Positions 6,424-64,000 of a DNA stretch of 64,000 bases are shown piece after piece. How positions within the stretch are numbered: position 1 is the stretch's first letter; each line of letters starts with the position of its first letter. Made by a program: the position numbers and the translations under genes. The DNA lies in the IMG/VR virus record IMGVR_UViG_3300044633_000899, positions 232,331 through 296,330 of that record, one strand, 5' to 3'. A model generated the notes under the pieces. The model saw only the letters and a program-made list of their open reading frames with translations, was not told where the DNA came from and did not search any database.

Positions 6424-6870
6424 TTAACCGATTACCATTAATTTTGGGTTGTAGTTTCTAACTGGGTTTGCGTCACTTATGTTAAACGTTTTGTCTAACC
6501 ACACTTTTATAATTGATTCTGTTTGTTCTGGTGTTAATTTAAAAAAATTTTCTAACACCATCCAAAATTCAGAATTGTTAATAAACATTTTTTTTGTCAA
6601 TAGATTAAAAACTATCAAATTGTCATTTGGTTTTTTGCGAAACAACATTAAATTAGATGATGTTTTACTTATAACCGTTTCTAAATCGTTATACAAATTT
6701 AAAAACTCAAACGGATTGTTGTCAAACCCTTTTGATATGATTGTGTCAATACTATTAAAATATATTAATTTATTCCACCCCTCATTTTTAATCTTATTTT
6801 GGATGATTTCTTTTTCACTTAAAGATTCATTTAATCTTTTGTACTGACTTTCGGATATAATAATTTTCAT
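6424..6870 (-). CDS. Variable-tail family protein, divergent member
   Basis: MKIIISESQYK leader; PFEFLNLYNDL matches the family motif PMDFLNLFNDL; WLD..FN motif followed by a tail of the same length ending IG. Confidence 0.85.
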   Translation of the reverse strand: MKIIISESQYKRLNESLSEKEIIQNKIKNEGWNKLIYFNSIDTIISKGFDNNPFEFLNLYNDLETVISKTSSNLMLFRKKPNDNLIVFNLLTKKMFINNSEFWMVLENFFKLTPEQTESIIKVWLDKTFNISDANPVRNYNPKLMVIG

Positions 6871-6874
6871 ATTG

Positions 6875-6881
6875 ATAAATA
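6875..6881 (-). promoter_or_regulatory. TATTTAT motif, putative late promoter (representative copy; about 22 copies upstream of genes)
   Basis: Coding-strand TATTTAT at 6401, 6875, 7346, 7832, 9391, 9875, 10346 (minus) and 12149, 13773, 15616, 21049, 23028, 35179, 38178, 41494, 46346, 47862, 48988, 51303, 51990, 52422, 61599 (plus), about 4-40 nt before start codons, mainly of structural genes. Confidence 0.7.
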
Positions 6882-6891
6882 TTCTATTTTT

Positions 6892-7341
6892 TCAATTTGT
6901 AGACCTCATCCAATTGTCATCAACACCAATTATCAATGGTATGACATCCCTTAAATTGTGGGTCAACCATTTCTGTATAAGTTTCTGTATATTAGTGTAG
7001 TTAAGACCAAAGTTACCTTCCAAAACTGACCAAATTTCATTATAATTAATATAAACCTCATCACTTTCTCTATCGTGAATGATAAAATTATGACCTTTTT
7101 TAAAACGATATAATGTCCAATATTCTTCTTCTTCACTCTGAACCGATTCCAGATCATTAAATAAGTTTAAGAAATCCATTGGTTCTTTAATGTCAAAAAT
7201 TTCAAGAGTTTTATCCAAGGACCCAACAATCTTTGTTACAGATTCAAAACCAACCTTTTTTATTAAACCCAATAATTTTTCTTTTAAAGAAACGTTTTCT
7301 TTAATTAGTTTGTATTGACTTTCGGTGATGATAATTTTCAT
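6892..7341 (-). CDS. Variable-tail family protein
   Basis: 149 aa, family core PMDFLNLFNDLESVQSEE; ends in the second repeat copy read as WMRSTN*. Confidence 0.9.
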   Translation of the reverse strand: MKIIITESQYKLIKENVSLKEKLLGLIKKVGFESVTKIVGSLDKTLEIFDIKEPMDFLNLFNDLESVQSEEEEYWTLYRFKKGHNFIIHDRESDEVYINYNEIWSVLEGNFGLNYTNIQKLIQKWLTHNLRDVIPLIIGVDDNWMRSTN

Positions 7342-7377
7342 ATTGATAAATATTCTAATTTTTTTAAATTGTAGATA

Positions 7378-7827
7378 TCATTCAATTTTTCCAATTACTT
7401 CCGTGCTGTTTGCGTAGATTCTGACTCCCCTTAAATTGTAGACCTCACCCAACCATATCTCTATAATTTTCTGTCTTTCAGAAAATTTAAGACCAAATTT
7501 ATCTTCCAATACTGACCAAATTTCATCAGAATTGATATAAACAGAATCATTTTTTCTATCGTAAACCATAAAGTTATGACCTTTTCTATAACGATACAAT
7601 GTCCAATTTTCATCTTCCTCACTCTGAACCGATTCCAAATCATTAAATAAATTTAAGAAATCCATCGGTTCTTTGACATCAAAGATTTCAAATGTTTTAT
7701 CCAAAGATCCAACAATCTTTGTTACAGATTTAAAACCAACTTTTTTTATTAAACCCAACAATTTTTCCTTTAAAGAAACGTTTTCTTTGATTAGTTTGTA
7801 TTGACTTTCGGATATAATAATTTTCAT
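7378..7827 (-). CDS. Variable-tail family protein
   Basis: 149 aa, family core; WLGEVYNLRGVR plus unique tail IYANSTEVIGKIE*. Confidence 0.9.
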   Translation of the reverse strand: MKIIISESQYKLIKENVSLKEKLLGLIKKVGFKSVTKIVGSLDKTFEIFDVKEPMDFLNLFNDLESVQSEEDENWTLYRYRKGHNFMVYDRKNDSVYINSDEIWSVLEDKFGLKFSERQKIIEIWLGEVYNLRGVRIYANSTEVIGKIE

Positions 7828-7862
7828 ATTGATAAATATTCTAATTTTTTAAATTGTAGACC

Positions 7863-9386
7863 TCATCCAGTAAAGAAATCCATTGGCATAAATACAAATT
7901 TAGGTGTGACTCCCCTTAAATTGTAGACCTCATCCAACCACCTCTCTGTAAGTTTTTGTATTTCAGAGTAGTTAAGACCAAATTTATCTTCCAAAACTGA
8001 CCAAATTTCATCATAATTGATATAAACATAATCCTTTTTTCTATCGTAAATCATTATATTATGATCTTTTTTATAACGAAATAATATCCAATTTTCTTTT
8101 TCTTCAGATTGGGTACCTTTCAAATCATTAAATAGATGTAAGAAATCCATCGGTTCTTTAATGTCAAAAATTTTAAATAAATTATCCAAGGATCCAACAA
8201 TTTTTGTTACAGATTCAAAACCAACTTTTTTGATTAAACCCAATAATTTTTCTTTTAAAGATATTGATTCATTTAATGGTTTTTTATTATCCTCTTTTTT
8301 TGTTTTTGAGATATATAAATCATTAACAAATTCCCAATTAACACAATTCCAAAAGTTTTTAATATATTCGTCACGTTTATTTTGATATTTTAAATAATAC
8401 GCGTGTTCCCAGACATCCAACCCCAACAATGGATAACCACCATCTTTAATGATATTCATTAATGGATTATCTTGATTTGGTGTGGACATAATTTTAAGTC
8501 TATTTGTTTTTGTTAAGACAAGCCAAACCCAACCAGAACCAAATCTATCTTTTGCAATTTGGTTAAACTCATCTTTCATCTTTTTTATATTACCATATTG
8601 TTTGGTAATTTTATCAAAAATTTCACCCTTTGGTATTTGTTTCTTTGGTGACAACATCTTCCAAAACAAAGCGTGGTTAAAAGCACCCCCAGCGTTGTTT
8701 CGTACTTTCTCATCAAATTTACTAATTGATTTTATAATATCTTCTAATTCAAGATCTTTATGTTTTTTTTCAGATAAAGCATCATTTAATTTTTTAACAT
8801 AACCTTTATAATGTTTGTTGTAATGAATATCCATCGTTTTTGGATCAACAAATTGTTTTAATGCGGAATATGAATATGGTAATTTTTCAATACCAATTTT
8901 TTTCATTTCCATAATAAACTCTTCTTTGATGTTTTCTTTTTCCGTTAAGAGAATTTGTTCTGAGATAAGATTAATTTTATTAACTATTTTTTCTGAACAC
9001 TCAAAAACCAATTGATTATAATCTGGGTATTCTTTTTCAAACATTTTTATTAATCTACCAGCAAAAGCGTTTGCCTCATCTTCATTTTGACCACCAATAT
9101 CTGGTCCTCGTTCTCTACCTAAAGAAAAACGTTGGTGTGCGTGAACCCACTCGTGAGCCAAGGTTCTCATAATGTCACGATTTAATCTATTTTTTGATAA
9201 AATTTTTAATGTACCGTCCATACTCTGACTACCAGTTGACATTTGACCCATTTTATCACCCAAAAACAAAATTGTTAAATCTTGATTAACAGGATAATGA
9301 TTACCTAAAAACTTGATAAAATCATTGTACATTTTTTTATCGTTAGCATCAAGTCCAGAATCATTATGTTTAATTGTGATTTTCAT
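7863..9386 (-). CDS. sodA: Tripartite fusion: HExxH zincin-like domain + Mn-type (Fe/Mn family) superoxide dismutase + variable-tail family domain
   Basis: TLAHEWVH...EDEANAFAG (aa ~75-110); SOD motifs LPYSYSAL, HYNKH, NNAGGAFNH, FGSGWVWL, NQDNP, DVWEHAYY (GG and NQD point to the Mn type); the last ~135 aa are a variable-tail domain. Confidence 0.9.
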   Translation of the reverse strand: MKITIKHNDSGLDANDKKMYNDFIKFLGNHYPVNQDLTILFLGDKMGQMSTGSQSMDGTLKILSKNRLNRDIMRTLAHEWVHAHQRFSLGRERGPDIGGQNEDEANAFAGRLIKMFEKEYPDYNQLVFECSEKIVNKINLISEQILLTEKENIKEEFIMEMKKIGIEKLPYSYSALKQFVDPKTMDIHYNKHYKGYVKKLNDALSEKKHKDLELEDIIKSISKFDEKVRNNAGGAFNHALFWKMLSPKKQIPKGEIFDKITKQYGNIKKMKDEFNQIAKDRFGSGWVWLVLTKTNRLKIMSTPNQDNPLMNIIKDGGYPLLGLDVWEHAYYLKYQNKRDEYIKNFWNCVNWEFVNDLYISKTKKEDNKKPLNESISLKEKLLGLIKKVGFESVTKIVGSLDNLFKIFDIKEPMDFLHLFNDLKGTQSEEKENWILFRYKKDHNIMIYDRKKDYVYINYDEIWSVLEDKFGLNYSEIQKLTERWLDEVYNLRGVTPKFVFMPMDFFTG

Positions 9387-9423
9387 AATTATAAATATCT
9401 AATGATTGTAAAATATAGTTTTA

Positions 9424-9870
9424 TTAAATCATAGATATCATCCAATCCCAATTCTGAAAGTTCTCAAAAACCCAAGTCGGTCTGGTTCTCTTTAAATTGT
9501 AGGTATCATCCAACCAATCCTTAATAAGGTTACTTATATCATAATAGTTTGTTAAATGTTTCTGTTCTAAAACTGACCAAATGTCACCATAATTGATATA
9601 AACAGCATCACTTCTTCTGTCGTGAATCATAATGTTATAACCTTTTTTATAACGATATAATGTCCAAGATGGTCTTTCCTCACTCTGAATTACATCCAAT
9701 TCATTAAATAAATTTAAGAAATCCATCGGTTCTTTGATATCCAAAATTTCAAGTGTTTTATCCAAGGATCCAACAATTTTTGTTGTGGACTTAAAACCAA
9801 TTTTTTTAACTAAACCTAGTAATTTTTCTTTAATCGATTTATATTGATTTTCGGTTATAATAATTTTCAT
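9424..9870 (-). CDS. Variable-tail family protein
   Basis: 148 aa, family core; WLDDTYNLKRTR plus unique tail ending WMISMI*. Confidence 0.9.
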   Translation of the reverse strand: MKIIITENQYKSIKEKLLGLVKKIGFKSTTKIVGSLDKTLEILDIKEPMDFLNLFNELDVIQSEERPSWTLYRYKKGYNIMIHDRRSDAVYINYGDIWSVLEQKHLTNYYDISNLIKDWLDDTYNLKRTRPTWVFENFQNWDWMISMI

Positions 9871-9891
9871 ATTGATAAATATTTCACTTTT

Positions 9892-10341
9892 TTAAATTGT
9901 GGTGTTGTGTATACCAACAATATGGTTATACGTTGTGATTCCCTTTAAATCATAGACCTCATCCAACCACGTTTCTACAAGGGTTGTAATGTCACCAAAG
10001 TTAATATCAAAATTATCTTCCAAAATTGTCCATATTTCGTCATAATTAATGAAAACATATTTAATTTTTCTATCGTAAATCATAAAATTATGACCTTTTT
10101 TATATCTATACAATACCCAATTTGGTTCTTCTTCACTCTGAACAACATCCAAATCATTAAATAAGTTCAAGAAATCCATTGGTTCTTTAATATCAAAGAT
10201 ATCAAAAGTTTTATCCAAAGACCCAACAACTCTTATCGTTGATTCAAATCCAACCTTTTTGATTAAACTCAATAATTTTTCTTTTAAAGAAACGTTTTCT
10301 TTGATTAGTTTGTATTGACTTTCGGTTATTATTATTCGCAT
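9892..10341 (-). CDS. Variable-tail family protein
   Basis: 149 aa, family core; WLDEVYDLKGIT plus unique tail TYNHIVGIHNTTI*. Confidence 0.9.
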   Translation of the reverse strand: MRIIITESQYKLIKENVSLKEKLLSLIKKVGFESTIRVVGSLDKTFDIFDIKEPMDFLNLFNDLDVVQSEEEPNWVLYRYKKGHNFMIYDRKIKYVFINYDEIWTILEDNFDINFGDITTLVETWLDEVYDLKGITTYNHIVGIHNTTI

Positions 10342-48999: not shown

Positions 49000-49458
49000 A
49001 TGGCAAATGGTGTAACATATGGGATAAATTTTCCTTTTAGAGATTCTTTTAATGGACGTTATTTAGATTTATCTGACACTACGGATGAAGAAATTAGAAC
49101 TGATTTGGTGCATTTATTATTATCCAGAAAAGGAACAAGATATTTTTTACCAGACTTTGGTACGAGATTATATGAATATATTTTTGAACCATTAGACGGG
49201 CCAACGTTTGCTGATGTTGAGTCTGAAATTAGGGATTCTGTTGAAAAATACATACCTGGGATTCAGATTTTAAATATTGAAATTAAAGATGCTTCTGAGG
49301 GTGAAGAAAATAAAGGTACATTTATTAATTCACAAGGTGAACGAGAATATACGGTACAAGGTATTGGTGAAAAAGAACATACGGCAAGAATAAAAATAAA
49401 TTATAGGGTAACAAATCAAGCGTTTGAAAGTACAGATTTTGTTATTATTAATATTTAA
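49000..49458 (+). CDS. Baseplate wedge protein gp25-like (GPW/gp25)
   Basis: LLLSRKGTRYFLPDFGTRLYEYIFEP...IRDSVEKYIP. Confidence 0.88.
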   Translation: MANGVTYGINFPFRDSFNGRYLDLSDTTDEEIRTDLVHLLLSRKGTRYFLPDFGTRLYEYIFEPLDGPTFADVESEIRDSVEKYIPGIQILNIEIKDASEGEENKGTFINSQGEREYTVQGIGEKEHTARIKINYRVTNQAFESTDFVIINI

Positions 49459-49463
49459 TAATT

Positions 49464-51302
49464 ATGGCAGAGAAAAAGATTTCATATACGGCTAGGGATT
49501 TCCAAACGATTAGAACGGAATTAATAAATTTTACACGAACGTATTATCCAGATTTAATCCAGAACTTTAATGATGCTGGTGTTTTTTCTGTTTTAATGGA
49601 TTTGAACGCGGCGGTAACTGATAATCTACAATTCCAAATAGATAGAAGTATTCAAGAAACGGTATTACAATACGCACAACAAAAATCATCAATTTATAAC
49701 ATAGCAAGAACATACGGATTAAAAATCCCTGGTCAACGACCTTCTGTTGCGTTAACTGATTTCTCAATTACGGTACCAGCGTTTGGTGATAAAGAAGATT
49801 TAAGATATTGTGGTATATTAAGACGAGGATCGCAAGTATCTGGTGCTGGACAACCATTTGAAACTGTTTATGATATTGATTTTGCATCACCATTAAATGG
49901 TGAGGGTTCACCAAATAGACTTAAAATACCAAATTTTGATTCAAACGGTAAAATTTTAAATTATACAATAACAAAAAGAGAGGTTGTTGTTAATGGGACA
50001 ACAAAGGTATTTAAGAGAGTTATTACACCAAATGATGTAAAACCTTATTTTGAATTATTCTTACCAGAAAAAAATGTTTTGGGAATAACAAGTGTTTTAT
50101 TAAAAGATGGTACACAATATACAACAATACCTGAACCACAAGAATTTCTTGGGTTGGATAACAGATGGTATGAAGTTAAAGCGTTGGCCGAAGATAGAGT
50201 GTTCATTGAGGACCCAACAAAGGTATCAGACCAACCTGGTGTTAAAGTAGGTAAATATATCACAACTAACACTAAATTCATTAGTGAATACACACCAGAA
50301 GGTTATCTAAAAATGACATTTGGTGGTGGTAATGTTTCGGCTGAAGAACAATTAAGAGAATTTACAAGAACTGGTAATTCATTTGATTTAAACAAATACT
50401 CAAACAATCTAGCACTAGGTGCTGCGTTAAAGTCAAACTCTACTTTATTTATTCAATATAGAATTGGTGGTGGACAATCAACAAACCTTGGATCAAATGT
50501 GATTACACAGATTGGTACGGTTTCGTTTTTTGTTAATGGACCATCAGAAACGATTAATAAAAGTGTTATTAATACATTAAGATGTAATAACGTGACAGCA
50601 GCAATAGGAGGGGCGAACGCACCAACAACTGAAGACGTAAGACAAATGGTTTCATTTAATTTTGCGGCACAAAACAGAGCGGTAACAATTAATGATTATG
50701 AATCAATAATAAAAACAATGCCATCACAATTTGGTGCACCAGCAAAAGTTGCGATAACTGAAGAAAACAATAAGATAAAAGTTAAAATGTTATCTTATGA
50801 TAGTAATGGTAATTTAACTGATACAATATCAAACACACTAAAAAGTAATTTATCAAATTATTTATCAAACTATAGAATGATAAATGATTATATCTCAATT
50901 GAGAGTGCAAACCCAATTGATCTATCTGTTGATGTTGATGTTGTATTAGACGCGACACAAAACCAAGGTGCTATCATATCAAAATTAATTAATATTGTAA
51001 CAACATTCTTTAGTCCAACAAATAGACAATTAGGACAAAACGTTAACGTATCTGAATTAAGAAGAATTATCCAGAACGAAAATGGAATTGTGAGTATTTC
51101 GGATTTAAGGTTTTTTAATAAGGTTGGGGGTCAGTATTCTTCATATCAGACATCACAAAGGTATTCCGATTTATCAACAAAACAAATTGAATTAATTAAT
51201 GATACGATATTTGCGGAACCAACACAGACTTATCAAGTTAGGTTTCCGAATAAGGATATTAATGTTAGGGTAATAAACTTAAAAACTGTGAATTTTTCAT
51301 AA
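49464..51302 (+). CDS. Baseplate wedge protein gp6/J-like
   Basis: RDFQTIR, FIQYRIGGGQSTN, AAIGGANA, QNRAVTINDY. Confidence 0.88.
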   Translation: MAEKKISYTARDFQTIRTELINFTRTYYPDLIQNFNDAGVFSVLMDLNAAVTDNLQFQIDRSIQETVLQYAQQKSSIYNIARTYGLKIPGQRPSVALTDFSITVPAFGDKEDLRYCGILRRGSQVSGAGQPFETVYDIDFASPLNGEGSPNRLKIPNFDSNGKILNYTITKREVVVNGTTKVFKRVITPNDVKPYFELFLPEKNVLGITSVLLKDGTQYTTIPEPQEFLGLDNRWYEVKALAEDRVFIEDPTKVSDQPGVKVGKYITTNTKFISEYTPEGYLKMTFGGGNVSAEEQLREFTRTGNSFDLNKYSNNLALGAALKSNSTLFIQYRIGGGQSTNLGSNVITQIGTVSFFVNGPSETINKSVINTLRCNNVTAAIGGANAPTTEDVRQMVSFNFAAQNRAVTINDYESIIKTMPSQFGAPAKVAITEENNKIKVKMLSYDSNGNLTDTISNTLKSNLSNYLSNYRMINDYISIESANPIDLSVDVDVVLDATQNQGAIISKLINIVTTFFSPTNRQLGQNVNVSELRRIIQNENGIVSISDLRFFNKVGGQYSSYQTSQRYSDLSTKQIELINDTIFAEPTQTYQVRFPNKDINVRVINLKTVNFS

Positions 51303-51313
51303 TATTTATTGAT

Positions 51314-51832
51314 ATGAAAATAATTATAACCGAAAATCAATACAAGTTAATTAAAGAAAACATTTCTTTAAAAGAAAAATTAAAGGACTTAATCAAAAAG
51401 GTTGGTTTTGAATCAATGGTAAGAGTTGTTGGATCCTTGGATAAAACGTTTGAAATCTTTGATGTCAAAGAACCGATGGATTTCTTAAATTTATTTAATG
51501 ATTTGGAATCGGTTCAGAGTGAAGAACGTGAAGATTGGACGTTATATCGTTATAAAAAAGGACATAATTTTATAGTTTACAATAGAAAAAATGATTATGT
51601 TCATATCAATTATGATGAAATTTGGTCAGTTTTAGAAGACAATTTTGGACTTAACTACTCTGAAACACAGAAACTTACAAAGAGATGGTTGGATGAGGTC
51701 TACAATTTAAGGGGAGTCACACCTTATATTTTTGACTTAACATCAACAGGGTTAAGGTTGGATGAGGTCTACAATTTAAGGGGAGTCACACCTCGCGAAA
51801 ATATATCGTTCGATATGTCTCGGATTGGATGA
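51314..51832 (+). CDS. Variable-tail family protein with duplicated tail unit
   Basis: 172 aa; family core; ...WLDEVYNLRGVT-PYIFDLTSTGLR-LDEVYNLRGVT-PRENISFDMSR-IG*. Confidence 0.9.
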   Translation: MKIIITENQYKLIKENISLKEKLKDLIKKVGFESMVRVVGSLDKTFEIFDVKEPMDFLNLFNDLESVQSEEREDWTLYRYKKGHNFIVYNRKNDYVHINYDEIWSVLEDNFGLNYSETQKLTKRWLDEVYNLRGVTPYIFDLTSTGLRLDEVYNLRGVTPRENISFDMSRIG

Positions 51833-51856
51833 GGTCTACAATTTAAGGGGAGTCAC
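51687..51856 (+). repeat. CRISPR-like repeat-spacer mini-array inside and beyond a CDS (3 x 34 bp; 35- and 33-nt unrelated spacers)
   Basis: GGTTGGATGAGGTCTACAATTTAAGGGGAGTCAC at 51687-51720 and 51756-51789 (identical) and 51823-51856 (1 mismatch); no cas genes in the window. Confidence 0.92.
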
Positions 51857-52023
51857 CGTCTATTGTAATATTTCCACAAAAAAGACATTTTTGTGAAACA
51901 ACACCAATCTTTTACTTTTTCACAAACAAGATTATTCTTTGAAAATAGGAAATAAACTTAAAAAGTGTAAATTTTTCATAACATCAATATATTTATATTG
52001 TAAATAATAAATAAAAAAAAACG

Positions 52024-52326
52024 ATGAAAAAAACAGTTAGATTAACAGAAAGAGATTTAACAAGAATTGTTAAAAGAGTAATTAAAGAAGGTAGTGAAAA
52101 CATTGAAGATTTACGACACGAAAGATTAGACCTACTAAAAAGAATTAAAAGATTTGCAAACAAATCTTATAATTTAGAAAACACGGTAGATATTGATTTA
52201 GAAAACACGGTAGATATGGATGATGACGATATGTATGGTGTTGGTGAATGTGTTGAAACTGCAGACGAACTGCTCAAAGCCTTGAAAAGAATTGGTGAAG
52301 ATCACGATATTAACGATTTTGAATAA
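52024..52326 (+). CDS. Acidic protein with LTExDLxRIV leader
   Basis: MKKTVRLTERDLTRIVKRVIKEG; internal 24-bp duplication (LENTVDID/LENTVDMD). Confidence 0.75.
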   Translation: MKKTVRLTERDLTRIVKRVIKEGSENIEDLRHERLDLLKRIKRFANKSYNLENTVDIDLENTVDMDDDDMYGVGECVETADELLKALKRIGEDHDINDFE

Positions 52327-52337
52327 ATTTTAAATTA

Positions 52338-52368
52338 AAAAAACCCCAATCTCAAGTTGGGGTTTTTT
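52338..52368 (+). terminator. Rho-independent terminator
   Basis: AAAAAACCCCAA-tctcaag-TTGGGGTTTTTT. Confidence 0.85.
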
Positions 52369-52445
52369 ATTTCTTTTACTTTTTCACAAACAAGATTATT
52401 CTTTGAAAATAGGAAATAAACTATTTATCAAAAAAGAAGGAATTA

Positions 52446-55400
52446 ATGCCCAAGTCATATAGAATAAGAACCGAGATTGGTCAAGACAAGTATGTTAATG
52501 TTAAATTAGAACAAGATTTTGACCAATTAGAAATATTATCACTTAAAATAAACGAATCCGATATATACACTAGAGTTTGTTCGGATTATGGTGTTATTGT
52601 TGGTCGTGTTTTGGTTAATGGTGGGTTTGGAGTACCAAACGCAAAAGTATCGGTTTTTATACCGTTATCAGATGAGGATGAGTTAAACCCATTGATTTCT
52701 GAATTATACCCATATAAAAATTTAACTGATTTAAATGAAGATGGTTATAGATATAATTTATTACCAAAAGACCCCTCTTATACAACACACGCAGCAACGG
52801 GAACGTTTCCAACAAGGGATGAGGTTTTGTTAGAACAATCGTACATTGAGGTGTATGATAAATATTATAAATTTACGGTTAAAACAAATGAAAGTGGTGA
52901 CTATATGATATTTGGTGTACCAACAGGAACACAAACAATTGTAATGGATGTTGACTTATCCGATATCGGATGCTTTTCATTAACACCACAAGATTTAATT
53001 GACTCTGGTGTTGCCAACCCATCACAAGTTAACGGAAACACATTTAAAACCTCAACAAATTTAAACGAGTTACCACAAATTAAAACTTTAAATACGATTA
53101 CTGAAATCGCACCATTTTGGGGTGATGCTGATATTTGTCAATTTGGTATAAATCGTCTTGATTTTGACTTAACCGCCGAGGCAAATATCAAAATTGAACC
53201 AACCGCTATTTTTATGGGATCAATAATAACAACAGCGGATGATGATGCTTTAAAAACAAATTGTAAACCAAAAAACAATACTGGTAATTTATGTGAATTA
53301 ATATCTGGACCAGGTCAAATATTATCAATTAGACAAACAATATTTCCTGATAGTCAAAATTTACCGGTTTTAGAAGAGTATAAATTTGAACAAAATGGTA
53401 AAGTAATTGATGGTGACGGATCGTTTTTAACTAAAGTACCAATGAATTTGGATTATATTATTACAAATGAATTTGGACAACAAGTTTTATCAAACGACAT
53501 AACAAAAGGAATACCAACAAAAGGAAAATATAGATTCAAGTTTAAATTTGAAAATGAACAAGGATTACAAAATGAGTTTTTACGAGCAAATTTTCTTGTC
53601 CCAAATATAAAAGAACACGGATGGACATCATCATCTAACGACCCATTTGACCCAACTACAGCGGTACCTTTAATAATTACGTTACCAGTTGGTACATTAA
53701 CTGGAACGACAACAATAACACAAACAGGGGGGTTGTTATTTGAAAATACTATAAATTCATCTAATTTTTCCGTTGTCATAAATGGTCAACCATATTTTGG
53801 TGACACTGGTGTAATACCAGTAATTGCTGGTGACATAGTTCAGATAATCTCAAATCCAATTGATGATACACAATTACAAGATATAATCTTTAAATCGTTA
53901 CCTCAAGGTTATTTTGATGTCTTGAGATCGTATACGTTTAGTTTAGATTGGGATGATTATGCCGATACTCAATCAGCAATTGATTGTGAAGACACTTTTT
54001 ATGAGTTTCACTACAATAAAGTATATACGACATCGATGTTTCTTGACCGATACAAAAATGGTTTAGGTAGGGCAAAACACCTTGGAATTAAAGAAATTGA
54101 TAATAGAACTTGTAAGACAACAGTAAATACATTCCCTGTTAATGATGCTATAAGAAATTTTGATTTTATATTTTTTGTTTTTAATATATTAATAACAATA
54201 TTAACATTTCCGATACTAACGTTATTATTTGTGGCCCATCTAATTTCATTTATGTGGCCAATATTAAAATATGTTTTAATATTTTTAGGGATATATTTAA
54301 CTTATACTGCTGGTGTTGCATTGGTTGAGTCAATACAAAGTGGTATACAAACAATAAACACAGGCATTGCGGCGGTAACGAATGCTGGGTTAGCCCTTGA
54401 TTTTGTTAGGTTAATTTTATACACTGTTTATACCATTGGTGTGGCAGCATTTAAACTTGCAATGGCACTTGCGTTTTTAGCCTTTGCTGTTGTTGCGGCA
54501 CTACGAATTAAAGGTTTCCCAAGAATTGGGTTACCAATGTTATCTTACCCCGAATGTACAAGTTGTGATTGTAAATGTGGTAACGCAGAAATGGATGACG
54601 ACTTTGATGAAACGTCAATACAAAGTCAAATAGACGCAAACAATAACAATAATACAACTATAGCACAATCAAATTCATTTTTAGCACCTATAAATTTATC
54701 TGAAACATATGTTGTTGATCACCCTAACTTTGAAAATAGACCAGGGTTTGACGTAGACCAAAATAGTAAAGGTTGGTTCAACGACACAAGTACTGGGGGT
54801 TCTACAGATTATAACTATAGGTCACTTTTAAATCGTTTTTATGATCAAGAAATAACTGCTGAGGTTGTTGCACAATCATCAATTGACTTTAGAAGACTTT
54901 TTTCTGGGTGGGACGATTTGTCAACAACTAATAATCCTATGTATAAATCACCAGAGTTCTTCTTATTTGGTGCAGAAAAAGTTAGTGGTTCTAATAATGA
55001 TAAACGTTGGTTCGCAAAACCAACGAAACAGACATACCCACAAAGGTTAAATGAATTTAATACGAGGGATAAATACTTCAACGGAGTAAACCAAATAACA
55101 ACAACGATTAATCCATCTTTAGGTTCACAACAATTTAATGATCAACCATTAGTGTTACTAGTAAAAAAAGGGACTACCAATAATTTAGGGGTTGGTGAAA
55201 TATTTTCTTTTGTTGACCCAAAAAAATCTAATGGTCAGATAAATATTACTGGTGCAACATTAAACCAATTTGGTTTAAATTCTGTAACTGGGACAACAAT
55301 AACTGGAATCACAAGTTACCCTATAACATATGCACACCCATCAAATCCATCTGTGGGGTTAACAGCAAATATACAAATCGTACAAACAGGTAATACCGAA

Positions 55401-57884
55401 AATCAAGTACAATTTTTACCAGACATTGAGTACTTCCAAATTATTACAGGAATGACTGTTGGTGATTATGAAAACATATCCGAATCTATTAATGTTAACA
55501 CGACATTATATCATAGCACATATCTTAAACATAAAATATCATATTCTGTTTATAATAATAATGGAAATACATTATCAACACCCCCAACAACAATAACAAC
55601 TGAAGATAGTTTTGGTGATGTTGTAACAAAACAAGTTAATAATTATACCGCGATAGAAACTATTGCTGATTATAGTTCAGAATATGAAATAATTGTTGTT
55701 GTTCGTGGTGTTGACCCATATACACAGAAACAAATAATAAAATACGATTTATCAAAGATATTCGGTTATTCAACAACAAATCCAAACACCGTTATTGAAG
55801 GTCAGTACTACATAAACTGGCCTATCCAGTCTGGATCAATAGCACCTAAAACACATAATACTATTGATAATAATACAACAACTAATTTGTATTTTAATTC
55901 TTTAACCTTTACTCCGTCTGTTGATTATAGTGGTTTTACATCTAATAATCCATATTATTATATTTCTACTGATGATAATACTATGTTACCTTACACACTT
56001 GGTGGCCAAAATTACCAACCAGTTAATAACGCAAACCCACTTTCGTTTTTCACATCACCTGGAACACAATATTCTGTGACATTAAACCCATCAAGAATTT
56101 TACCATTACCACCATCTAATATACCATATTATATTGGGGGTGGTTCGTTTATTGGTATAAATACAAATATAAGCACTAGTGATTTGTATATTAATAATGT
56201 TACTGATTCCGAAGTTGGTTGGCCGTTTAGTAATAATAATTTACTACGATATACAATGTATTCTGCCGCATATTACAGATACACAAATACTGGGGAATTA
56301 CTAGGGGTAAACTTCTCAAATCGTAATAATATTGTTATGCGAAGTGATAGGTTACCAACATCTTCTTGTGTTGAAGACGGGTTCAATAACAGAACTGGAT
56401 ATGCTTTACATCAGAACAATAATTTTTGTTATTATAAAACAGATGGACAGACATCAAACCCAACACAAGGTGTTGCTTCTGACCTTCCTTCTGGAGAAGG
56501 TTTTGACAACGAACTTATTGGTTTGACACAAACTTTAAATTGTGATAATATGGTTTCGTTAAACTGTTATAGTGGAACTGGAACAAACGTTGGGGTCCTA
56601 CCACAAGGAGATTGTGATGTTCCAGACAATAGGGTTGTAAATGGGTGTTTTTGTTTATTAAATAAACGATATTTATTTGAATATGGTGATGACGCAAAAC
56701 TATTCTTAGAATGGAAAACTAGGTTTACAATAACGTTTGCGACGTGTAGAGGTGTGTTCGCACAAACTTTTCAAAATAATTGGGTAAATGGTGTTTTATA
56801 TATGTTTACATTTAATAAAACAGCAACATACCCAATAAATAACCCCAATGACCCAACCTATAATTATTGTTCAGACGTAATTGTTTATAATGATATAAAC
56901 AATGGGTTTTATTATAGATCGTCACCTTGGGATGGTAATGACTTTATAGGTAAAAACAGCCCAACAATACCAACAACTTGGCCGTCAGTGTTAGTTAATG
57001 ATTACCCAGGTACTGGTTATAACACAAAACAAATTCAATTCCCAACGACAATTGTTGATATGGGTCCTAGAGAAAAATTTATATCTGAAATCTGTAATAA
57101 TAATAATTTTAATAGTTATTACGTTGATAACATAAAATCAACGTCATACCAAGATCTATCTGATGTTATTCAGATTGGATTTTTATCTAGATTACTAAAC
57201 GATAATTTTAGACAAGCAATATTACCAATATCAAACCCTGCTGGTGATAATACTGAAGGTAAGGGTATAATCCAATTCTTTAATAGCACTAGACAAGCAG
57301 ATAGAATTGATGGTGATTTTGCACAAATGTTCTCGATAAATTCTGAATGGAAAATATCACCATTTTTAAGTGAAAACTACCCAAATCCGGATTCTATATT
57401 TTTTGGAAATGACACACAATCAGATCAAAGACCGGTTTTTGGTGTTTTTTATGAAGTACCACAAATTAATAATTCATATAGAAAAAACTTAACACCTGGA
57501 CTTGAAACCTTAAACTACTCACCACTATTACAATATTACTACGGATACCCAAAAACACAAGAAGTACCATTCTATAAATGGACAATTGAATCACAATCTG
57601 GTAATATTTTTGGTAATGAAAATAATAATTGGGACACAACCGGACCTTTCTATAAGAGAGGGTATCAAGATTTAGATTTTACAAATAATAACGAGTACTA
57701 CCAAACATCTACAACACAATTAGGATATTTAACAAATTTTGATCTAAATGGAGATCCTCAACCATTACAAAATAATTCTGGTAGTTACGTTGTTGGCGCA
57801 CCATTTCATTTTTATTTTGGTTTAAATAATGGTAAAACAGCAATTGATAAATTTGTTAAATTATATGTAAACACTGAGGAATAA
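52446..57884 (+). CDS. Large virion/baseplate protein with an N-terminal carboxypeptidase-regulatory-like beta-sandwich and a multi-helix hydrophobic segment
   Basis: GVPNAKVSVF...TNESGDYMIFGVPTGTQTIVMD; hydrophobic stretch at aa ~570-690; lies in the baseplate cluster. Confidence 0.55.
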   Translation: MPKSYRIRTEIGQDKYVNVKLEQDFDQLEILSLKINESDIYTRVCSDYGVIVGRVLVNGGFGVPNAKVSVFIPLSDEDELNPLISELYPYKNLTDLNEDGYRYNLLPKDPSYTTHAATGTFPTRDEVLLEQSYIEVYDKYYKFTVKTNESGDYMIFGVPTGTQTIVMDVDLSDIGCFSLTPQDLIDSGVANPSQVNGNTFKTSTNLNELPQIKTLNTITEIAPFWGDADICQFGINRLDFDLTAEANIKIEPTAIFMGSIITTADDDALKTNCKPKNNTGNLCELISGPGQILSIRQTIFPDSQNLPVLEEYKFEQNGKVIDGDGSFLTKVPMNLDYIITNEFGQQVLSNDITKGIPTKGKYRFKFKFENEQGLQNEFLRANFLVPNIKEHGWTSSSNDPFDPTTAVPLIITLPVGTLTGTTTITQTGGLLFENTINSSNFSVVINGQPYFGDTGVIPVIAGDIVQIISNPIDDTQLQDIIFKSLPQGYFDVLRSYTFSLDWDDYADTQSAIDCEDTFYEFHYNKVYTTSMFLDRYKNGLGRAKHLGIKEIDNRTCKTTVNTFPVNDAIRNFDFIFFVFNILITILTFPILTLLFVAHLISFMWPILKYVLIFLGIYLTYTAGVALVESIQSGIQTINTGIAAVTNAGLALDFVRLILYTVYTIGVAAFKLAMALAFLAFAVVAALRIKGFPRIGLPMLSYPECTSCDCKCGNAEMDDDFDETSIQSQIDANNNNNTTIAQSNSFLAPINLSETYVVDHPNFENRPGFDVDQNSKGWFNDTSTGGSTDYNYRSLLNRFYDQEITAEVVAQSSIDFRRLFSGWDDLSTTNNPMYKSPEFFLFGAEKVSGSNNDKRWFAKPTKQTYPQRLNEFNTRDKYFNGVNQITTTINPSLGSQQFNDQPLVLLVKKGTTNNLGVGEIFSFVDPKKSNGQINITGATLNQFGLNSVTGTTITGITSYPITYAHPSNPSVGLTANIQIVQTGNTENQVQFLPDIEYFQIITGMTVGDYENISESINVNTTLYHSTYLKHKISYSVYNNNGNTLSTPPTTITTEDSFGDVVTKQVNNYTAIETIADYSSEYEIIVVVRGVDPYTQKQIIKYDLSKIFGYSTTNPNTVIEGQYYINWPIQSGSIAPKTHNTIDNNTTTNLYFNSLTFTPSVDYSGFTSNNPYYYISTDDNTMLPYTLGGQNYQPVNNANPLSFFTSPGTQYSVTLNPSRILPLPPSNIPYYIGGGSFIGINTNISTSDLYINNVTDSEVGWPFSNNNLLRYTMYSAAYYRYTNTGELLGVNFSNRNNIVMRSDRLPTSSCVEDGFNNRTGYALHQNNNFCYYKTDGQTSNPTQGVASDLPSGEGFDNELIGLTQTLNCDNMVSLNCYSGTGTNVGVLPQGDCDVPDNRVVNGCFCLLNKRYLFEYGDDAKLFLEWKTRFTITFATCRGVFAQTFQNNWVNGVLYMFTFNKTATYPINNPNDPTYNYCSDVIVYNDINNGFYYRSSPWDGNDFIGKNSPTIPTTWPSVLVNDYPGTGYNTKQIQFPTTIVDMGPREKFISEICNNNNFNSYYVDNIKSTSYQDLSDVIQIGFLSRLLNDNFRQAILPISNPAGDNTEGKGIIQFFNSTRQADRIDGDFAQMFSINSEWKISPFLSENYPNPDSIFFGNDTQSDQRPVFGVFYEVPQINNSYRKNLTPGLETLNYSPLLQYYYGYPKTQEVPFYKWTIESQSGNIFGNENNNWDTTGPFYKRGYQDLDFTNNNEYYQTSTTQLGYLTNFDLNGDPQPLQNNSGSYVVGAPFHFYFGLNNGKTAIDKFVKLYVNTEE

Positions 57885-62548: not shown

Positions 62549-64000
62549 TGGCATTAAAAAAATATACATGCCCACCACAAACACCATCGGGAAGTGGGAC
62601 TTTTTCTGACAACTTAGTTGGTTTCCAATTAGTTGATGGGGGAGGTTTTACACAAGGAAATTTTGAATTTACAGAAAACTTAACAGAAAAACAAAATAGA
62701 ACATTCAATATTGGTTCTTTTTCTGACCCAATAAATTTGGATAGTTTAAAAATAACGAGTGTTGACGAATCTAGATTATTACAAGCAAAAAACTTCAGAG
62801 TTTTCCCAAATTTTGATTTATCACAAGTAACAAATTTTACGTTATATGGGTCGTTAGTAAAACGAATTTCAGTGTCTGTTACAAACATTATAAATTATTT
62901 TCCAGGTGGGTTAGAAATTATTACAACAAAACCTGACTTCACAAAAACGGAGACGGCAAAAAACATTGTTTACGATCCAATTGAGAATGAAACTTATTTT
63001 CAAATTCCATTAAATGCGATTAGAAATCCTTTTGGTGTTGATTACTCAAAAAATGCTACAAGAAATTTAGAAGTTAGTGAGTTAAAAGTTTCGCAATTAA
63101 GAAATTTTACACTAAATTATGATAAATACGCGGTTTTTGTTAATGGTAATAATTACATAATAAATACTTTTGAACCAACAACATCAACCTCACAAACATT
63201 AAATATGTATGTTGAGGGAAATCCATTTTCTGGTGAATCAATAACGTACACATCAATATTAATACGACCAACAGACTATTATGTTAGTAAAGTTTTTAAC
63301 GAAGAGTTTGATGAGGTTGAAAAGTTTTTACTAAATAGAAGTTCAGTACCACAATATACCGCAACATTTAATGTTACAAAAGAAAATGATGATGGTACGT
63401 TTTATTTAACAACTGAAAATATAACATTTCCTAAAAATGGTTTTTGGAATTTGGATATTAGTTCAGTTTCATTTGACAAATATTTAACACAATTAAATAC
63501 TTTTGCAGCAAGTTTAGATACTTTCAGAACAAATTTGGTATCTAGATTTTTAACAACTGGTGCTTTTAAAGATTTTGATACTGATGATCAAAAAATGGAA
63601 AAAATCTTACAAATTTATGGTAGGAGTTTTGATGAATCAATGAAATTTATATTGGCATTACCAAATATGAATAACGTTCATTATATTGTTAAAAATGATA
63701 TACCATCACAATTATTAAAAAACTTAGCACAAACATTAGGGTGGAAAACAAATATCTCACCAATAACCGAAGAACAATTATTGGATTCAGTTTTTAATAA
63801 TGGTTCTAACAATTTTTCTGGTGTTGGTATTGGTCAAACCCCAGAAGAGTTAAATTACCAATACTATAGAAATCTAATATTAAATTCGGCTTACTTATTC
63901 AAGTCAAAAGGAACCCGTAAATCTATTGAAATATTATTACGATTAATTGGTGCTCCAGAAATGTTAGTTGAATTTAATGAATACATTTATATTGCTGACC
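62548..64000 (+). CDS. Baseplate wedge protein (gp7/P2 gpI-like), 3' truncated, absent from ORF track
   Basis: ATG overlaps the upstream TAA; frame open to the window end (MALKKYTCPPQ...); contains LLKNLAQTLGW and LFKSKGTRKSIEILLRLIG, the KGT motif of gpI/gp7-type wedges. Confidence 0.7.
   Translation, partial: MALKKYTCPPQTPSGSGTFSDNLVGFQLVDGGGFTQGNFEFTENLTEKQNRTFNIGSFSDPINLDSLKITSVDESRLLQAKNFRVFPNFDLSQVTNFTLYGSLVKRISVSVTNIINYFPGGLEIITTKPDFTKTETAKNIVYDPIENETYFQIPLNAIRNPFGVDYSKNATRNLEVSELKVSQLRNFTLNYDKYAVFVNGNNYIINTFEPTTSTSQTLNMYVEGNPFSGESITYTSILIRPTDYYVSKVFNEEFDEVEKFLLNRSSVPQYTATFNVTKENDDGTFYLTTENITFPKNGFWNLDISSVSFDKYLTQLNTFAASLDTFRTNLVSRFLTTGAFKDFDTDDQKMEKILQIYGRSFDESMKFILALPNMNNVHYIVKNDIPSQLLKNLAQTLGWKTNISPITEEQLLDSVFNNGSNNFSGVGIGQTPEELNYQYYRNLILNSAYLFKSKGTRKSIEILLRLIGAPEMLVEFNEYIYIAD

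What the first reader, a model, noticed from the sequence alone, without database searches (positions are those of the whole stretch)
51908..52422. One-gene cassette bracketed by an exact 51-bp direct repeat
Seen: the repeat is the sequence just upstream of the TATTTAT motif of the 1812-aa gene. Between the copies lie a TATTTAT motif, a leader-bearing ORF and a terminator, forming a self-contained expression unit. Inference: recent Campbell-type insertion of a circular cassette, excisable by one crossover; a snapshot of how leader-cargo genes move between loci.
Basis: partly seen in the sequence, partly recalled or inferred. Interest (0 to 1): 0.6.

Follow-up and report, generated by a model that had tools for sequence, protein, structure and literature searches.

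The report
Gene cassette stacked in phage hotspot
In a 296-kb T4-like lake-water phage, a small gene with its own promoter and terminator sits between two identical 51-base copies of its neighbour's promoter region, and close relatives carry the site empty or with only this gene, so it is a well-documented but ordinary case of phages gaining and losing accessory genes by recombination.

Summary
The 51-bp exact direct repeat (51908-51958, 52372-52422) is real. It has only these two copies in the genome and is supported by independent assemblies. Its right half is the near-invariant upstream element of the 1812-aa gene's promoter. Between the copies lie a TATTTAT promoter-like motif, a 100-aa ORF with a conserved 22-aa N-terminal leader, and a hairpin terminator.

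The predicted empty-site allele exists (L005, L105, a contig in run X3). So does a third allele (L097/L098, run X4), in which the cassette directly follows the 612-aa baseplate gene.

The cassette carries a 23-nt relic of a 612-gene 3' end on its left. The window is therefore best read as an offset crossover between these two allele types at an 8-11-nt microhomology (AATAAACT). A 464-bp circle is not needed, though it is not excluded.

This intergenic site is a hotspot. 66 of 80 relatives have no gene there. Others carry different leader-cargo genes, terminator relics, or other duplication scars.

The closest known analogues are morons, T4-type PeSL cassettes and the T4 internal-protein loci. 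The phage encodes a gp21-type prohead protease, and leader conservation stops right after an I/L-x-E site. A capsid-targeting leader is therefore a plausible but untested function.

The parts
49464..51302 (+). 612-aa baseplate gene (Baseplate_J / gp6-like); left border of the hotspot
   Evidence: Pfam PF04865, E 1.2e-5, above cut-off. Homologue present in 79 of 80 related loci.
51269..51305 (+). X: the last 31 coding nt, stop codon and 3 nt of the 612-aa gene. It begins GGTAATAAACT, which supplies the microhomology partner of the R51 end.
   Evidence: 33 of 37 nt identical to 51948-51984. These are the only two such places in the genome.
51314..51832 (+). 172-aa ORF of the MKIIITENQYK paralogue family; the occupant of allele A
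   Evidence: At least 12 paralogues in the genome. No Pfam or PHROGs family. Present alone at this site in L005, L006, L007 and L105.
51688..51859 (+). Three 36-nt repeats (51688, 51757, 51824; the last degenerate) separated by unique 33- and 31-nt spacers. The first repeat encodes the C-terminus of the 172-aa ORF.
   Evidence: Spacers differ between close relatives.
51908..51958 (+). R51 copy 1: the upstream element of the 1812-aa gene's promoter, cut off from its TATTTAT
   Evidence: Exact 51-mer. Followed by the relic instead of ATTTAT.
51959..51981 (+). Relic of a 612-aa gene 3' end (encodes ..KSVNFS and a stop), carried on the left of the cassette
   Evidence: Identical to the genuine 612-gene end in L105. 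20 of 23 nt identical to the window's own gene end. L033 carries a shorter relic of the same kind.
51990..51996 (+). TATTTAT promoter-like motif of the cassette, 27 nt before the ATG, followed by an A-rich untranslated stretch
   Evidence: TATTTAT lies within 60 nt upstream of 103 of 356 crude gene calls, mostly 4-20 nt before the ATG.
52024..52326 (+). Cassette ORF, 100 aa (P0001): 22-aa leader followed by an acidic cargo
   Evidence: Homologues of 79-90% identity all lie at this hotspot. No protein family. AlphaFold model poor, pLDDT 57.
52172..52219 (+). 24-nt tandem duplication inside the cassette ORF (8 extra residues)
   Evidence: D8. One unit is absent in P0002-P0005 and in run X4.
52338..52371 (+). 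Intrinsic-terminator-like hairpin (A-run, GC stem, T-run)
   Evidence: 100% identical in L097. Analogous hairpins follow the cassettes of L008, L033, L036, L038, L064 and L073.
52372..52422 (+). R51 copy 2: the functional-context copy, directly joined to the TATTTAT of the 1812-aa gene
   Evidence: Its right half is near-invariant in 80 relatives.
52422..52428 (+). TATTTAT of the 1812-aa gene
52446..57884 (+). 1812-aa gene (no family found; lies in the baseplate/tail module); right border of the hotspot
   Evidence: At least 597 relatives in IMG/VR.

Best explanation
**What it is.** The window comes from a complete, about 296-kb, T4-like phage from lake water. The short spacer between its gp6-like baseplate gene (612 aa) and the next structural gene (1812 aa) is a hotspot where small accessory genes are gained, swapped and lost.

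**Ancestral state.** The spacer is 75-82 nt with no gene. It ends in a very conserved promoter region: an upstream element, then TATTTAT, then an A-rich leader.

**Three alleles circulate among close relatives.**
- A: 612 gene, 172-aa ORF with repeats, R51, 1812 gene.
- B: 612 gene, leader-cargo cassette, terminator, R51, 1812 gene.
- C (the window): 612 gene, 172-aa ORF, R51, 23-nt relic of a 612-gene end, cassette, terminator, R51, 1812 gene.

**How C arose.** C is the product of one offset (unequal) crossover between an A-type and a B-type genome in a mixed infection. It joined the end of R51 (..GGAAATAAACT) to the look-alike ..GGTAATAAACT in the last codons of the 612-aa gene. This stacked both inserts and duplicated the 51-nt promoter segment. 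Recombination would be by the phage's or host's general machinery, not a site-specific enzyme.

**What can happen next.** Once formed, the two identical 51-mers allow loss of the cassette by one homologous crossover, as a deletion or as a 464-bp circle. That regenerates A.

**The cassette itself.** It is a moron-like unit with its own TATTTAT promoter, an ORF and a terminator. Its ORF belongs to a family whose 22-aa N-terminal leader is conserved at the protein level and whose remainder is unrelated from gene to gene. The leader-coding DNA on the left, and the terminator plus promoter block on the right, act as homology arms for cargo exchange.

**Leader function (inferred, about 0.35).** The leader is a capsid-targeting propeptide like that of the T4 internal proteins, removed by the gp21-type prohead protease after I/L-x-E.

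**Shown:** the structure, the three alleles, the relic, the hotspot and the leader conservation pattern.

**Inferred:** the order of events, the recombination machinery and the function of the leader and cargo.
For: **Structure and repeat:**

**Alleles**
- A, the empty site: L005 has a single R51 and lacks exactly 464 nt. L105 has an R51 100% identical to the window's, including copy 1's left flank. Run X3 has the joint 51908->52373.
- B: L097 and L098 have the cassette directly after the 612 stop. Their terminator and R51 are 100% identical to the window's, and the backbone is 97-99% identical. Run X4 has the joint 51303->51983.

**Relic:** 51959-51981 equals the true 612-gene end of L105.

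**Microhomology:** 8 exact nt, or 10 of 11, at the junction. The chance of 8 exact is about 5e-5 (my arithmetic). This wording of the 612 end occurs only in the window's clade.

**Hotspot**
- 66 of 80 relatives have a 75-82-nt spacer. The promoter core is near-invariant even at 63% protein identity.
- Six other loci carry different leader-cargo ORFs with the same promoter/terminator frame. Two loci keep only the terminator.

**Other offset-recombination scars:** L100 has a second copy of at least 118 nt of the 612 3' end between two cassettes. L033 has a tandem copy of 612 end plus promoter.

**Cargo swap at the end of the leader:** L100 has the promoter and leader of the L064 type joined to P0001-type cargo.

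**Recombination machinery:** no integrase or resolvase. A weak RecA/UvsX-like match, E 2.8e-5, below cut-off.

**Leader**
- 24 of 356 genes carry the N-terminal motif, against 0.05 in shuffles.
- 120 synonymous against 126 non-synonymous codon differences in the first 24 codons. Identity collapses right after ..I-K-E.
- The genome encodes a Peptidase_S77 (gp21-type) protease and a Gp23 capsid protein.
- T4 capsid-targeting sequences (CTS) are 10-20-residue propeptides, and the protease cuts after Glu (PMC5694885, PMC3012670).
Against: - No exact donor was found. L097's 612 end and promoter differ from the window's relic and promoter at 6 of 63 nt. A metagenome scan for the exact relic-plus-promoter string found nothing.
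- At sites that distinguish A-type from B-type relatives, the window is mosaic on both flanks rather than A-like on the left and B-like on the right. So the parents cannot be identified, or later recombination has blurred them.
- The same product would come from a circle integrating at R51. Sequence alone cannot separate the two routes.
- L099 shows a colinear composite in a distant backbone with diverged R51 copies. The arrangement may therefore be older than '100% identical repeats' suggests, with the window's copies kept identical by selection or gene conversion.
- All read evidence is from assembled contigs, which hide rare variants.
- The leader function is untested. No proteomic data exist and the structure model is poor.
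Confidence: 0.68

Rival explanations
1. Campbell-type insertion. A 464-bp circle carrying relic, cassette, terminator and R51 was excised from a B-type genome, and then integrated into an A-type genome by one homologous crossover within R51.
For: - The product is formally identical to the window.
- In a B-type genome the two AATAAACT words are direct repeats 464 nt apart, so excision of exactly this circle is conceivable.
- In T4-type phages, mini-circles made by recombination between promoter/terminator cassettes were detected experimentally (PMC2839356).
Against: - It needs two rare events, one of them at the same 8-11-nt microhomology, where one suffices.
- There is no site-specific recombinase.
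- No contig with the circle or tandem junction was found in the metagenome collection. This is weak, because small circles are rarely assembled.
Confidence: 0.17
2. C is the older arrangement, and A and B are its two pop-out derivatives. A would arise by R51 x R51 recombination, and B by recombination between the 612 end and its relic.
For: - Both deletions are exactly the joints seen in runs X3 and X4.
- A C-like composite occurs in a distant backbone (L099).
- A with an identical R51 (L105) could be a revertant.
Against: - In B (L097, and by the joint position X4), the 612 end carries the window's own gene-end variants up to position 35 of the 37 shared nt. A crossover would have to fall in the last 2 nt.
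- The single-cassette state directly after the 612 stop is the common form in many diverged relatives.
- The relic itself shows that the cassette once followed a 612 gene directly.
Confidence: 0.1
3. Assembly artefact: a chimera of co-occurring A and B strains.
For: A, B and C alleles all occur in lake-water metagenomes. Repeats do break short-read assemblies (contigs end at the repeat).
Against: - The R51-to-relic junction exists in no A or B allele. It is covered, with 30 nt of R51-specific sequence, by error-free contigs in two runs and by two independent IMG/VR assemblies.
- Runs X1 and X2 show no A or B joint.
Confidence: 0.02

Closest known systems
PeSL (promoter-early stem-loop) cassettes of T4-type phages (Arbiol et al. 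2010, PMC2839356; Comeau et al. 2014, PMC4122927)
   Same: - The phage is T4-like.
- Small ORFans are framed by a composite terminator-plus-promoter block.
- Indels between near-identical phages are bounded by these blocks.
- Exchange is by general homologous recombination on patches of about 50 bp.
- No dedicated recombinase is involved.
- The unit is transcriptionally insulated, so insertion does not disturb its neighbours.
- PeSLs are occasionally found inside virion modules next to genes of unknown function.
   Different: - The duplicated 51-mer is a locus-specific promoter segment with two copies only, not a genome-wide repeated motif.
- The promoter motif is TATTTAT with short A-rich leaders, not a sigma-70 early promoter.
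- The duplication was created by a microhomology junction, with a relic of the upstream gene.
- The 5' homology arm is a conserved coding leader.
- Mini-circles were not tested here.
Morons of tailed phages (moron accretion, Hendrix et al. 2000, as summarised in PMC2839356)
   Same: - A single gene with its own promoter and terminator.
- Inserted between two genes of a conserved structural module.
- Absent from close relatives.
- Likely acquired by illegitimate recombination.
   Different: - It has the same orientation as the flanking genes.
- It sits in a recurrent hotspot with conserved linkers, so later exchange is homologous rather than random.
Internal-protein (IP) loci of T-even phages: diverse cargo behind a conserved capsid-targeting sequence (PMC3012670; PMC5694885; Repoila et al. 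1994, as cited in PMC2839356)
   Same: - A short conserved N-terminal leader ending in Glu, followed by unrelated cargo.
- Many variants among close phages.
- Loci framed by promoter and stem-loop elements.
- The phage encodes a gp21-type prohead protease.
   Different: - There is no sequence similarity to the T4 CTS.
- The leader is 22 aa, and 24 genes are scattered over several loci, including the baseplate module.
- Packaging, cleavage and any anti-defence role are untested.
Integron gene cassettes
   Same: One-gene units that can exist with or without a given cassette at a fixed site. A circular intermediate is conceivable.
   Different: - There is no integrase and no attC-like site.
- The cassette brings its own promoter.
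- The flanking repeat is a duplicated piece of the target.

Membership tests
Moron | Single ORF with its own promoter-like element and terminator | tested here: met
   TATTTAT at 51990-51996 (motif general in this genome). Terminator at 52338-52368. Function of both is inferred from sequence only.
Moron | Inserted between two adjacent genes of a conserved module and absent in close relatives | tested here: met
   66 of 80 relatives have only 75-82 nt between the two genes. The empty-site allele occurs in L005, L105 and run X3.
PeSL cassette (T4-type phages) | Host phage belongs to the T4 superfamily | tested here: met
   Gp23 capsid protein (E 2.8e-64) and Peptidase_S77 (E 5e-23). gp25 and Baseplate_J next to the site.
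PeSL cassette (T4-type phages) | Conserved composite motif of a sigma-70-like early promoter plus stem-loop, repeated many times in hyperplastic regions | tested here: not met
   R51 and its upstream element occur only twice. The promoter-like motif is TATTTAT, not TTGACA/TATAAT. Terminator-then-TATTTAT composites do recur upstream of other leader genes, so the architecture is analogous, not homologous.
PeSL cassette (T4-type phages) | Indels between near-identical phages bounded by the motif | tested here: met
   The 464-nt indel is bounded by R51.
PeSL cassette (T4-type phages) | Mini-circles formed by recombination between flanking motifs | not testable with these tools
   Only assembled contigs were available. 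The scan for a circle/tandem junction found nothing, which is uninformative.
Campbell-type site-specific integration | Site-specific recombinase (tyrosine or serine) encoded by the element or genome | tested here: not met
   No PF00589 or PF00239 match in the 296-kb genome. Controls were positive.
T4-type internal proteins (CTS-bearing) | Short conserved N-terminal propeptide ending at a Glu of an I/L-x-E site, followed by unrelated cargo | tested here: met
   The 22-aa leader ends ..V-I-K-E, and LTE lies at residues 7-9. 258 of 504 leader codon pairs are identical, against 7 of 336 cargo codon pairs.
T4-type internal proteins (CTS-bearing) | gp21-type prohead protease present | tested here: met
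   PF03420, 78.9 bits, genome 167773-168498.
T4-type internal proteins (CTS-bearing) | Protein packaged in the head and leader cleaved off | not testable with these tools
   Needs virion proteomics. No isolate is known.
T4-type internal proteins (CTS-bearing) | Sequence homology to known IP or CTS families | tested here: not met
   No Pfam or PHROGs family. No named Atlas cluster. The motif is not found in the literature library.

The most novel reading that the evidence does not exclude
The 22-aa leader is a capsid-targeting and protease-cleaved propeptide. On this reading, the roughly two dozen leader genes of this T4-like, probably Flavobacterium-infecting, jumbo phage are an exchangeable arsenal of injected proteins. 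The conserved leader-coding DNA, together with terminator/promoter blocks, forms a built-in cassette-exchange system. That system swaps and stacks cargo among co-infecting phages, possibly through mini-circles, and even inside the baseplate gene module.
Probability: 0.25. Interest if true: 0.7.

Novelty: new member of a known kind. Interest (0 to 1): 0.45.

Why it matters
It gives an unusually complete natural record of moron accretion. Both single-insert parent types, the stacked product, the junction microhomology, a relic that names the cassette's former neighbour, and later loss products are all recovered from environmental genomes.

It extends promoter/terminator-linked modular shuffling, known from coliphage-type T4 relatives, to large freshwater phages with a different promoter grammar.

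It also points to a large leader-cargo gene family. If the leader is a head-targeting signal, the family would be a ready-made catalogue of injected phage proteins, and the leader a natural tag for packaging proteins into capsids.

Tried and rejected
- Phage GenBank collection (blastn, distant mode): no match.
- Rfam on 51200-52600: only sub-threshold terminator look-alikes and no CRISPR repeat family.
- Pfam and PHROGs for the cassette protein, the 172-aa ORF and the 1812-aa protein: nothing above cut-off.
- ESM Atlas feature search with the leader: only unnamed clusters below 0.9.
- AlphaFold2 of the cassette protein with 7 sequences: pLDDT 57, too poor for a fold search, so none was run.
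- Search for the exact donor and for a circle or tandem junction in the metagenome contigs: 0 hits each, which is uninformative.
- Informative-site test for 'left flank from A, right flank from B': mosaic, no decision.
- A CRISPR reading of the neighbouring 36-nt repeats. I found no Cas1 or Cas2 in the genome. There was no exact protospacer in IMG/VR for the two window spacers and no self-match. The repeat does not fold. It is absent from bacterial representative genomes except one mis-binned phage contig. Left open.
- Complex prediction was not used. The leader/scaffold binding idea is only a hypothesis and the test has low power.
- Sigma-70 type promoter scan: not enriched, 9 against 7.5.

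Full report
**Setting.** The window is the last 64 kb of a 296,330-bp IMG/VR virus record. The record's two ends overlap by about 174 bp, so the genome is complete. It is AT-rich, about 31% G+C. It encodes a T4-type major capsid protein and a gp21-type prohead protease. The finding lies in the baseplate module. A gp25-like gene (49000-49458) and a Baseplate_J/gp6-like gene of 612 aa (49464-51302) lie to the left. An 1812-aa gene without a known family (52446-57884) lies to the right. All sequencing runs that hold the stretch are lake-water metagenomes.

**Observation.** The exact 51-nt direct repeat (R51) is at 51908-51958 and 52372-52422, and these are its only copies in the genome. Three features lie between them. 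TATTTAT is at 51990-51996. A 100-aa ORF (52024-52326) begins MKKTVRLTERDLTRIVKRVIKE. A hairpin with a T-run is at 52338-52368. Copy 2 runs into the TATTTAT of the 1812-aa gene.

TATTTAT is a genuine general signal here. It lies within 60 nt upstream of 103 of 356 crude gene calls, mostly 4-20 nt before the ATG. The structure is reproduced in an independent IMG/VR contig (L004). It is also reproduced in error-free 494-nt contigs from two runs, which cover 51929-52422.

**What R51 is.** I collected 80 relatives through the N-terminus of the 1812-aa protein (63-100% identity). In 66 of them the two flanking genes are separated by only 75-82 nt. In all of them the segment corresponding to the right half of R51 plus TATTTAT plus an A-run is almost invariant. 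It is better conserved than the coding flanks. R51 is therefore the upstream part of a strongly constrained promoter region of the 1812-aa gene. The element occurs nowhere else in the genome. Copy 1 is cut off from its TATTTAT.

**Alleles.**
- L005 (about 99% identical) lacks exactly the 464 nt and has one R51.
- L105, a phage fragment binned in a Flavobacterium MAG, has the same allele, with an R51 identical to the window's.
- Run X3 has a 956-nt contig with the joint 51908->52373.
- A third allele, B, was found through homologues of the cassette protein. In L097 and L098 the cassette follows the 612-gene stop directly. It is followed by a terminator and an R51 that are 100% identical to the window's, on a backbone that is 97-99% identical.
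- Run X4 shows the matching joint 51303->51983.

**The relic and the junction.** The 37 nt at 51948-51984 match the last 37 nt around the stop of the window's own 612-aa gene (51269-51305) at 33 positions. The first 11 of these are the end of R51. The next 23 (51959-51981) are a copy of a 612-gene 3' end, and they are identical to the real gene end in L105. So the cassette once lay directly behind a 612-aa gene, as in allele B. The join to R51 lies in the shared word AATAAACT (10 of 11 nt with the two preceding G). That wording of the gene end is peculiar to the window's clade.

One offset crossover between an A-type and a B-type genome at this microhomology yields the window (allele C). A circle would have to be cut out at the same microhomology and then integrated at R51, which is two events. 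Neither a tyrosine nor a serine recombinase is encoded. A weak RecA/UvsX-like match exists. I cannot exclude the circle, because only assembled contigs were available, and a scan for the circle or tandem junction in metagenome contigs was empty.

The reverse order (C first, with A and B as pop-outs) is unlikely for B. Its gene end keeps the resident variants up to position 35 of the 37 shared nt. A may be either a parent or a revertant.

**Limits.**
- The exact donor was not found.
- At sites that separate A-type from B-type relatives, the window is mosaic on both sides, as expected in a freely recombining population.
- L099 has a backbone only 72-82% identical. It carries a colinear composite whose first R51 copy, promoter and leader are 96-97% identical to the window's. 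Its own promoter copy and terminator differ.
- Either the stacked unit was transferred between diverged phages, or it formed twice. 'Recent' is therefore not established.

**The site is a hotspot.**
- L008, L033, L036, L038, L064 and L073 carry other ORFs at this position. Each has TATTTAT, an A-rich leader, the same 22-aa N-terminus, an unrelated body, a GC hairpin terminator, and the same short T-rich linker into the conserved promoter.
- L031 and L074 retain only the terminator.
- L100 has two cassettes separated by a second copy of at least 118 nt of the 612-gene 3' end.
- L033 has a tandem copy of gene end plus promoter.
- Together these are independent scars of the same offset recombination.
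- L100 also joins the promoter and leader of the L064 type to the cargo of the window's type, exactly at the end of the leader. This shows that the leader-coding DNA serves as a crossover site for cargo exchange.
- All homologues of this cargo lie at this one locus. I see exchange between genomes, not movement between loci.

**The leader family.** 24 of 356 genes begin with the motif MK(K)II.(L/I)TE.(D/Q)(L/Y), against 0.05 in shuffles. There are two subtypes. One is the cassette's type (MKKIIRLTESDLTRIVKRVIKE). The other is the type of the neighbouring 172-aa ORF (MKIIITENQYK).

Among the seven strict copies the leader shows about as many synonymous as non-synonymous codon differences, and similarity vanishes right after ..I-K-E. 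So the peptide itself is under selection. T4 internal proteins share only a 10-20-residue capsid-targeting propeptide that the gp21 protease removes after a Glu. They are otherwise highly diverse (PMC3012670, PMC5694885), and their loci are framed by promoter/stem-loop elements (PMC2839356). This phage has the protease. One family member lies in the head-gene cluster next to it, and the capsid protein's N-terminal region also contains VIKE. I rate the targeting-propeptide reading at about 0.35. No family, structure or literature hit supports or contradicts it.

**Comparison and verdict.** The unit meets the definition of a moron. It works like the PeSL cassettes of T4-type phages, but it is not a member in the strict sense. 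The repeat is a locus-specific duplicated promoter piece and the promoter grammar differs.

This is a new, well-documented member of a known kind of phage genome plasticity. The leader-cargo family is the more promising lead.

Noticed in passing
window 51688-51859; also genome 31860, 50215, 77390, 79354 (+) and window about 7380-9960 (-); L006, L007, L099, L105: CRISPR-like repeat-spacer strings. A 36-nt repeat (begins GTTGG, ends CACACC) is separated by unique 29-33-nt spacers, with the last repeat degenerate. There are up to 6 or 7 repeat units in L006 and L007, which differ only in the spacer next to the gene. Spacers differ completely between near-identical phages. Oddly, the first repeat encodes the conserved C-terminus (LDEVYNLRGVTP) of the MKIIITENQYK paralogue family. 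I found no Cas1/Cas2, no hairpin, no exact protospacer and no bacterial array with this repeat. The strings may be mini-arrays, or stacks built by the same offset recombination. Unexplained.
   Followed up: partly
whole genome; in the window 6424-10341 (-), 13795, 47881, 51314, 52024: 24 of 356 genes share an N-terminal motif MK(K)II.(L/I)TE.(D/Q)(L/Y), in two subtypes. The window holds a tandem cluster of five 148-149-aa paralogues on the minus strand.
   Followed up: partly
window 7863-9386 (-): A 507-aa ORF is a fusion. It has an N-terminal part with an HExxH-like motif, a complete Fe/Mn superoxide dismutase (Pfam Sod_Fe_N and Sod_Fe_C, E 4e-22 and 6e-40), and a C-terminal copy of the 172-aa ORF family domain ending in the 36-nt repeat.
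   Followed up: partly
genome 112591-112642 and 114822-114873 (outside the window): A second exact promoter-region direct repeat: 52 nt, 2,231 nt apart, each just upstream of a TATTTAT and a leader-type gene. It brackets a 593-aa and a 104-aa gene in a region dense with leader genes (110-116 kb). It is possibly the same kind of stacking scar.
   Followed up: no
window 52172-52219: A 24-nt tandem duplication inside the cassette ORF adds 8 residues (DIDLENTV). Homologues and run X4 have one unit.
   Followed up: yes
L105 (CAZSZH010000129.1, 1825 nt): A contig filed under an uncultured Flavobacterium MAG is a fragment of this phage group (612-aa gene end, 172-aa ORF, repeats, R51, start of the 1812-aa gene). 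It is either a binning contaminant or a weak hint at the host.
   Followed up: partly
genome 1-174 and 296157-296330 (window 63827-64000): The record's two ends repeat each other (127 and 46 nt exact, with one mismatch between), although the record is classed as linear without end repeats. The genome is probably complete, and either circularly permuted or has a short terminal repeat.
   Followed up: no
L073 versus L074, L036 versus L031: Pairs of relatives in which the cassette ORF is gone but its terminator remains. In L073 the ORF is flanked by two TATTTATAA words, and L074 looks like the deletion between them.
   Followed up: partly
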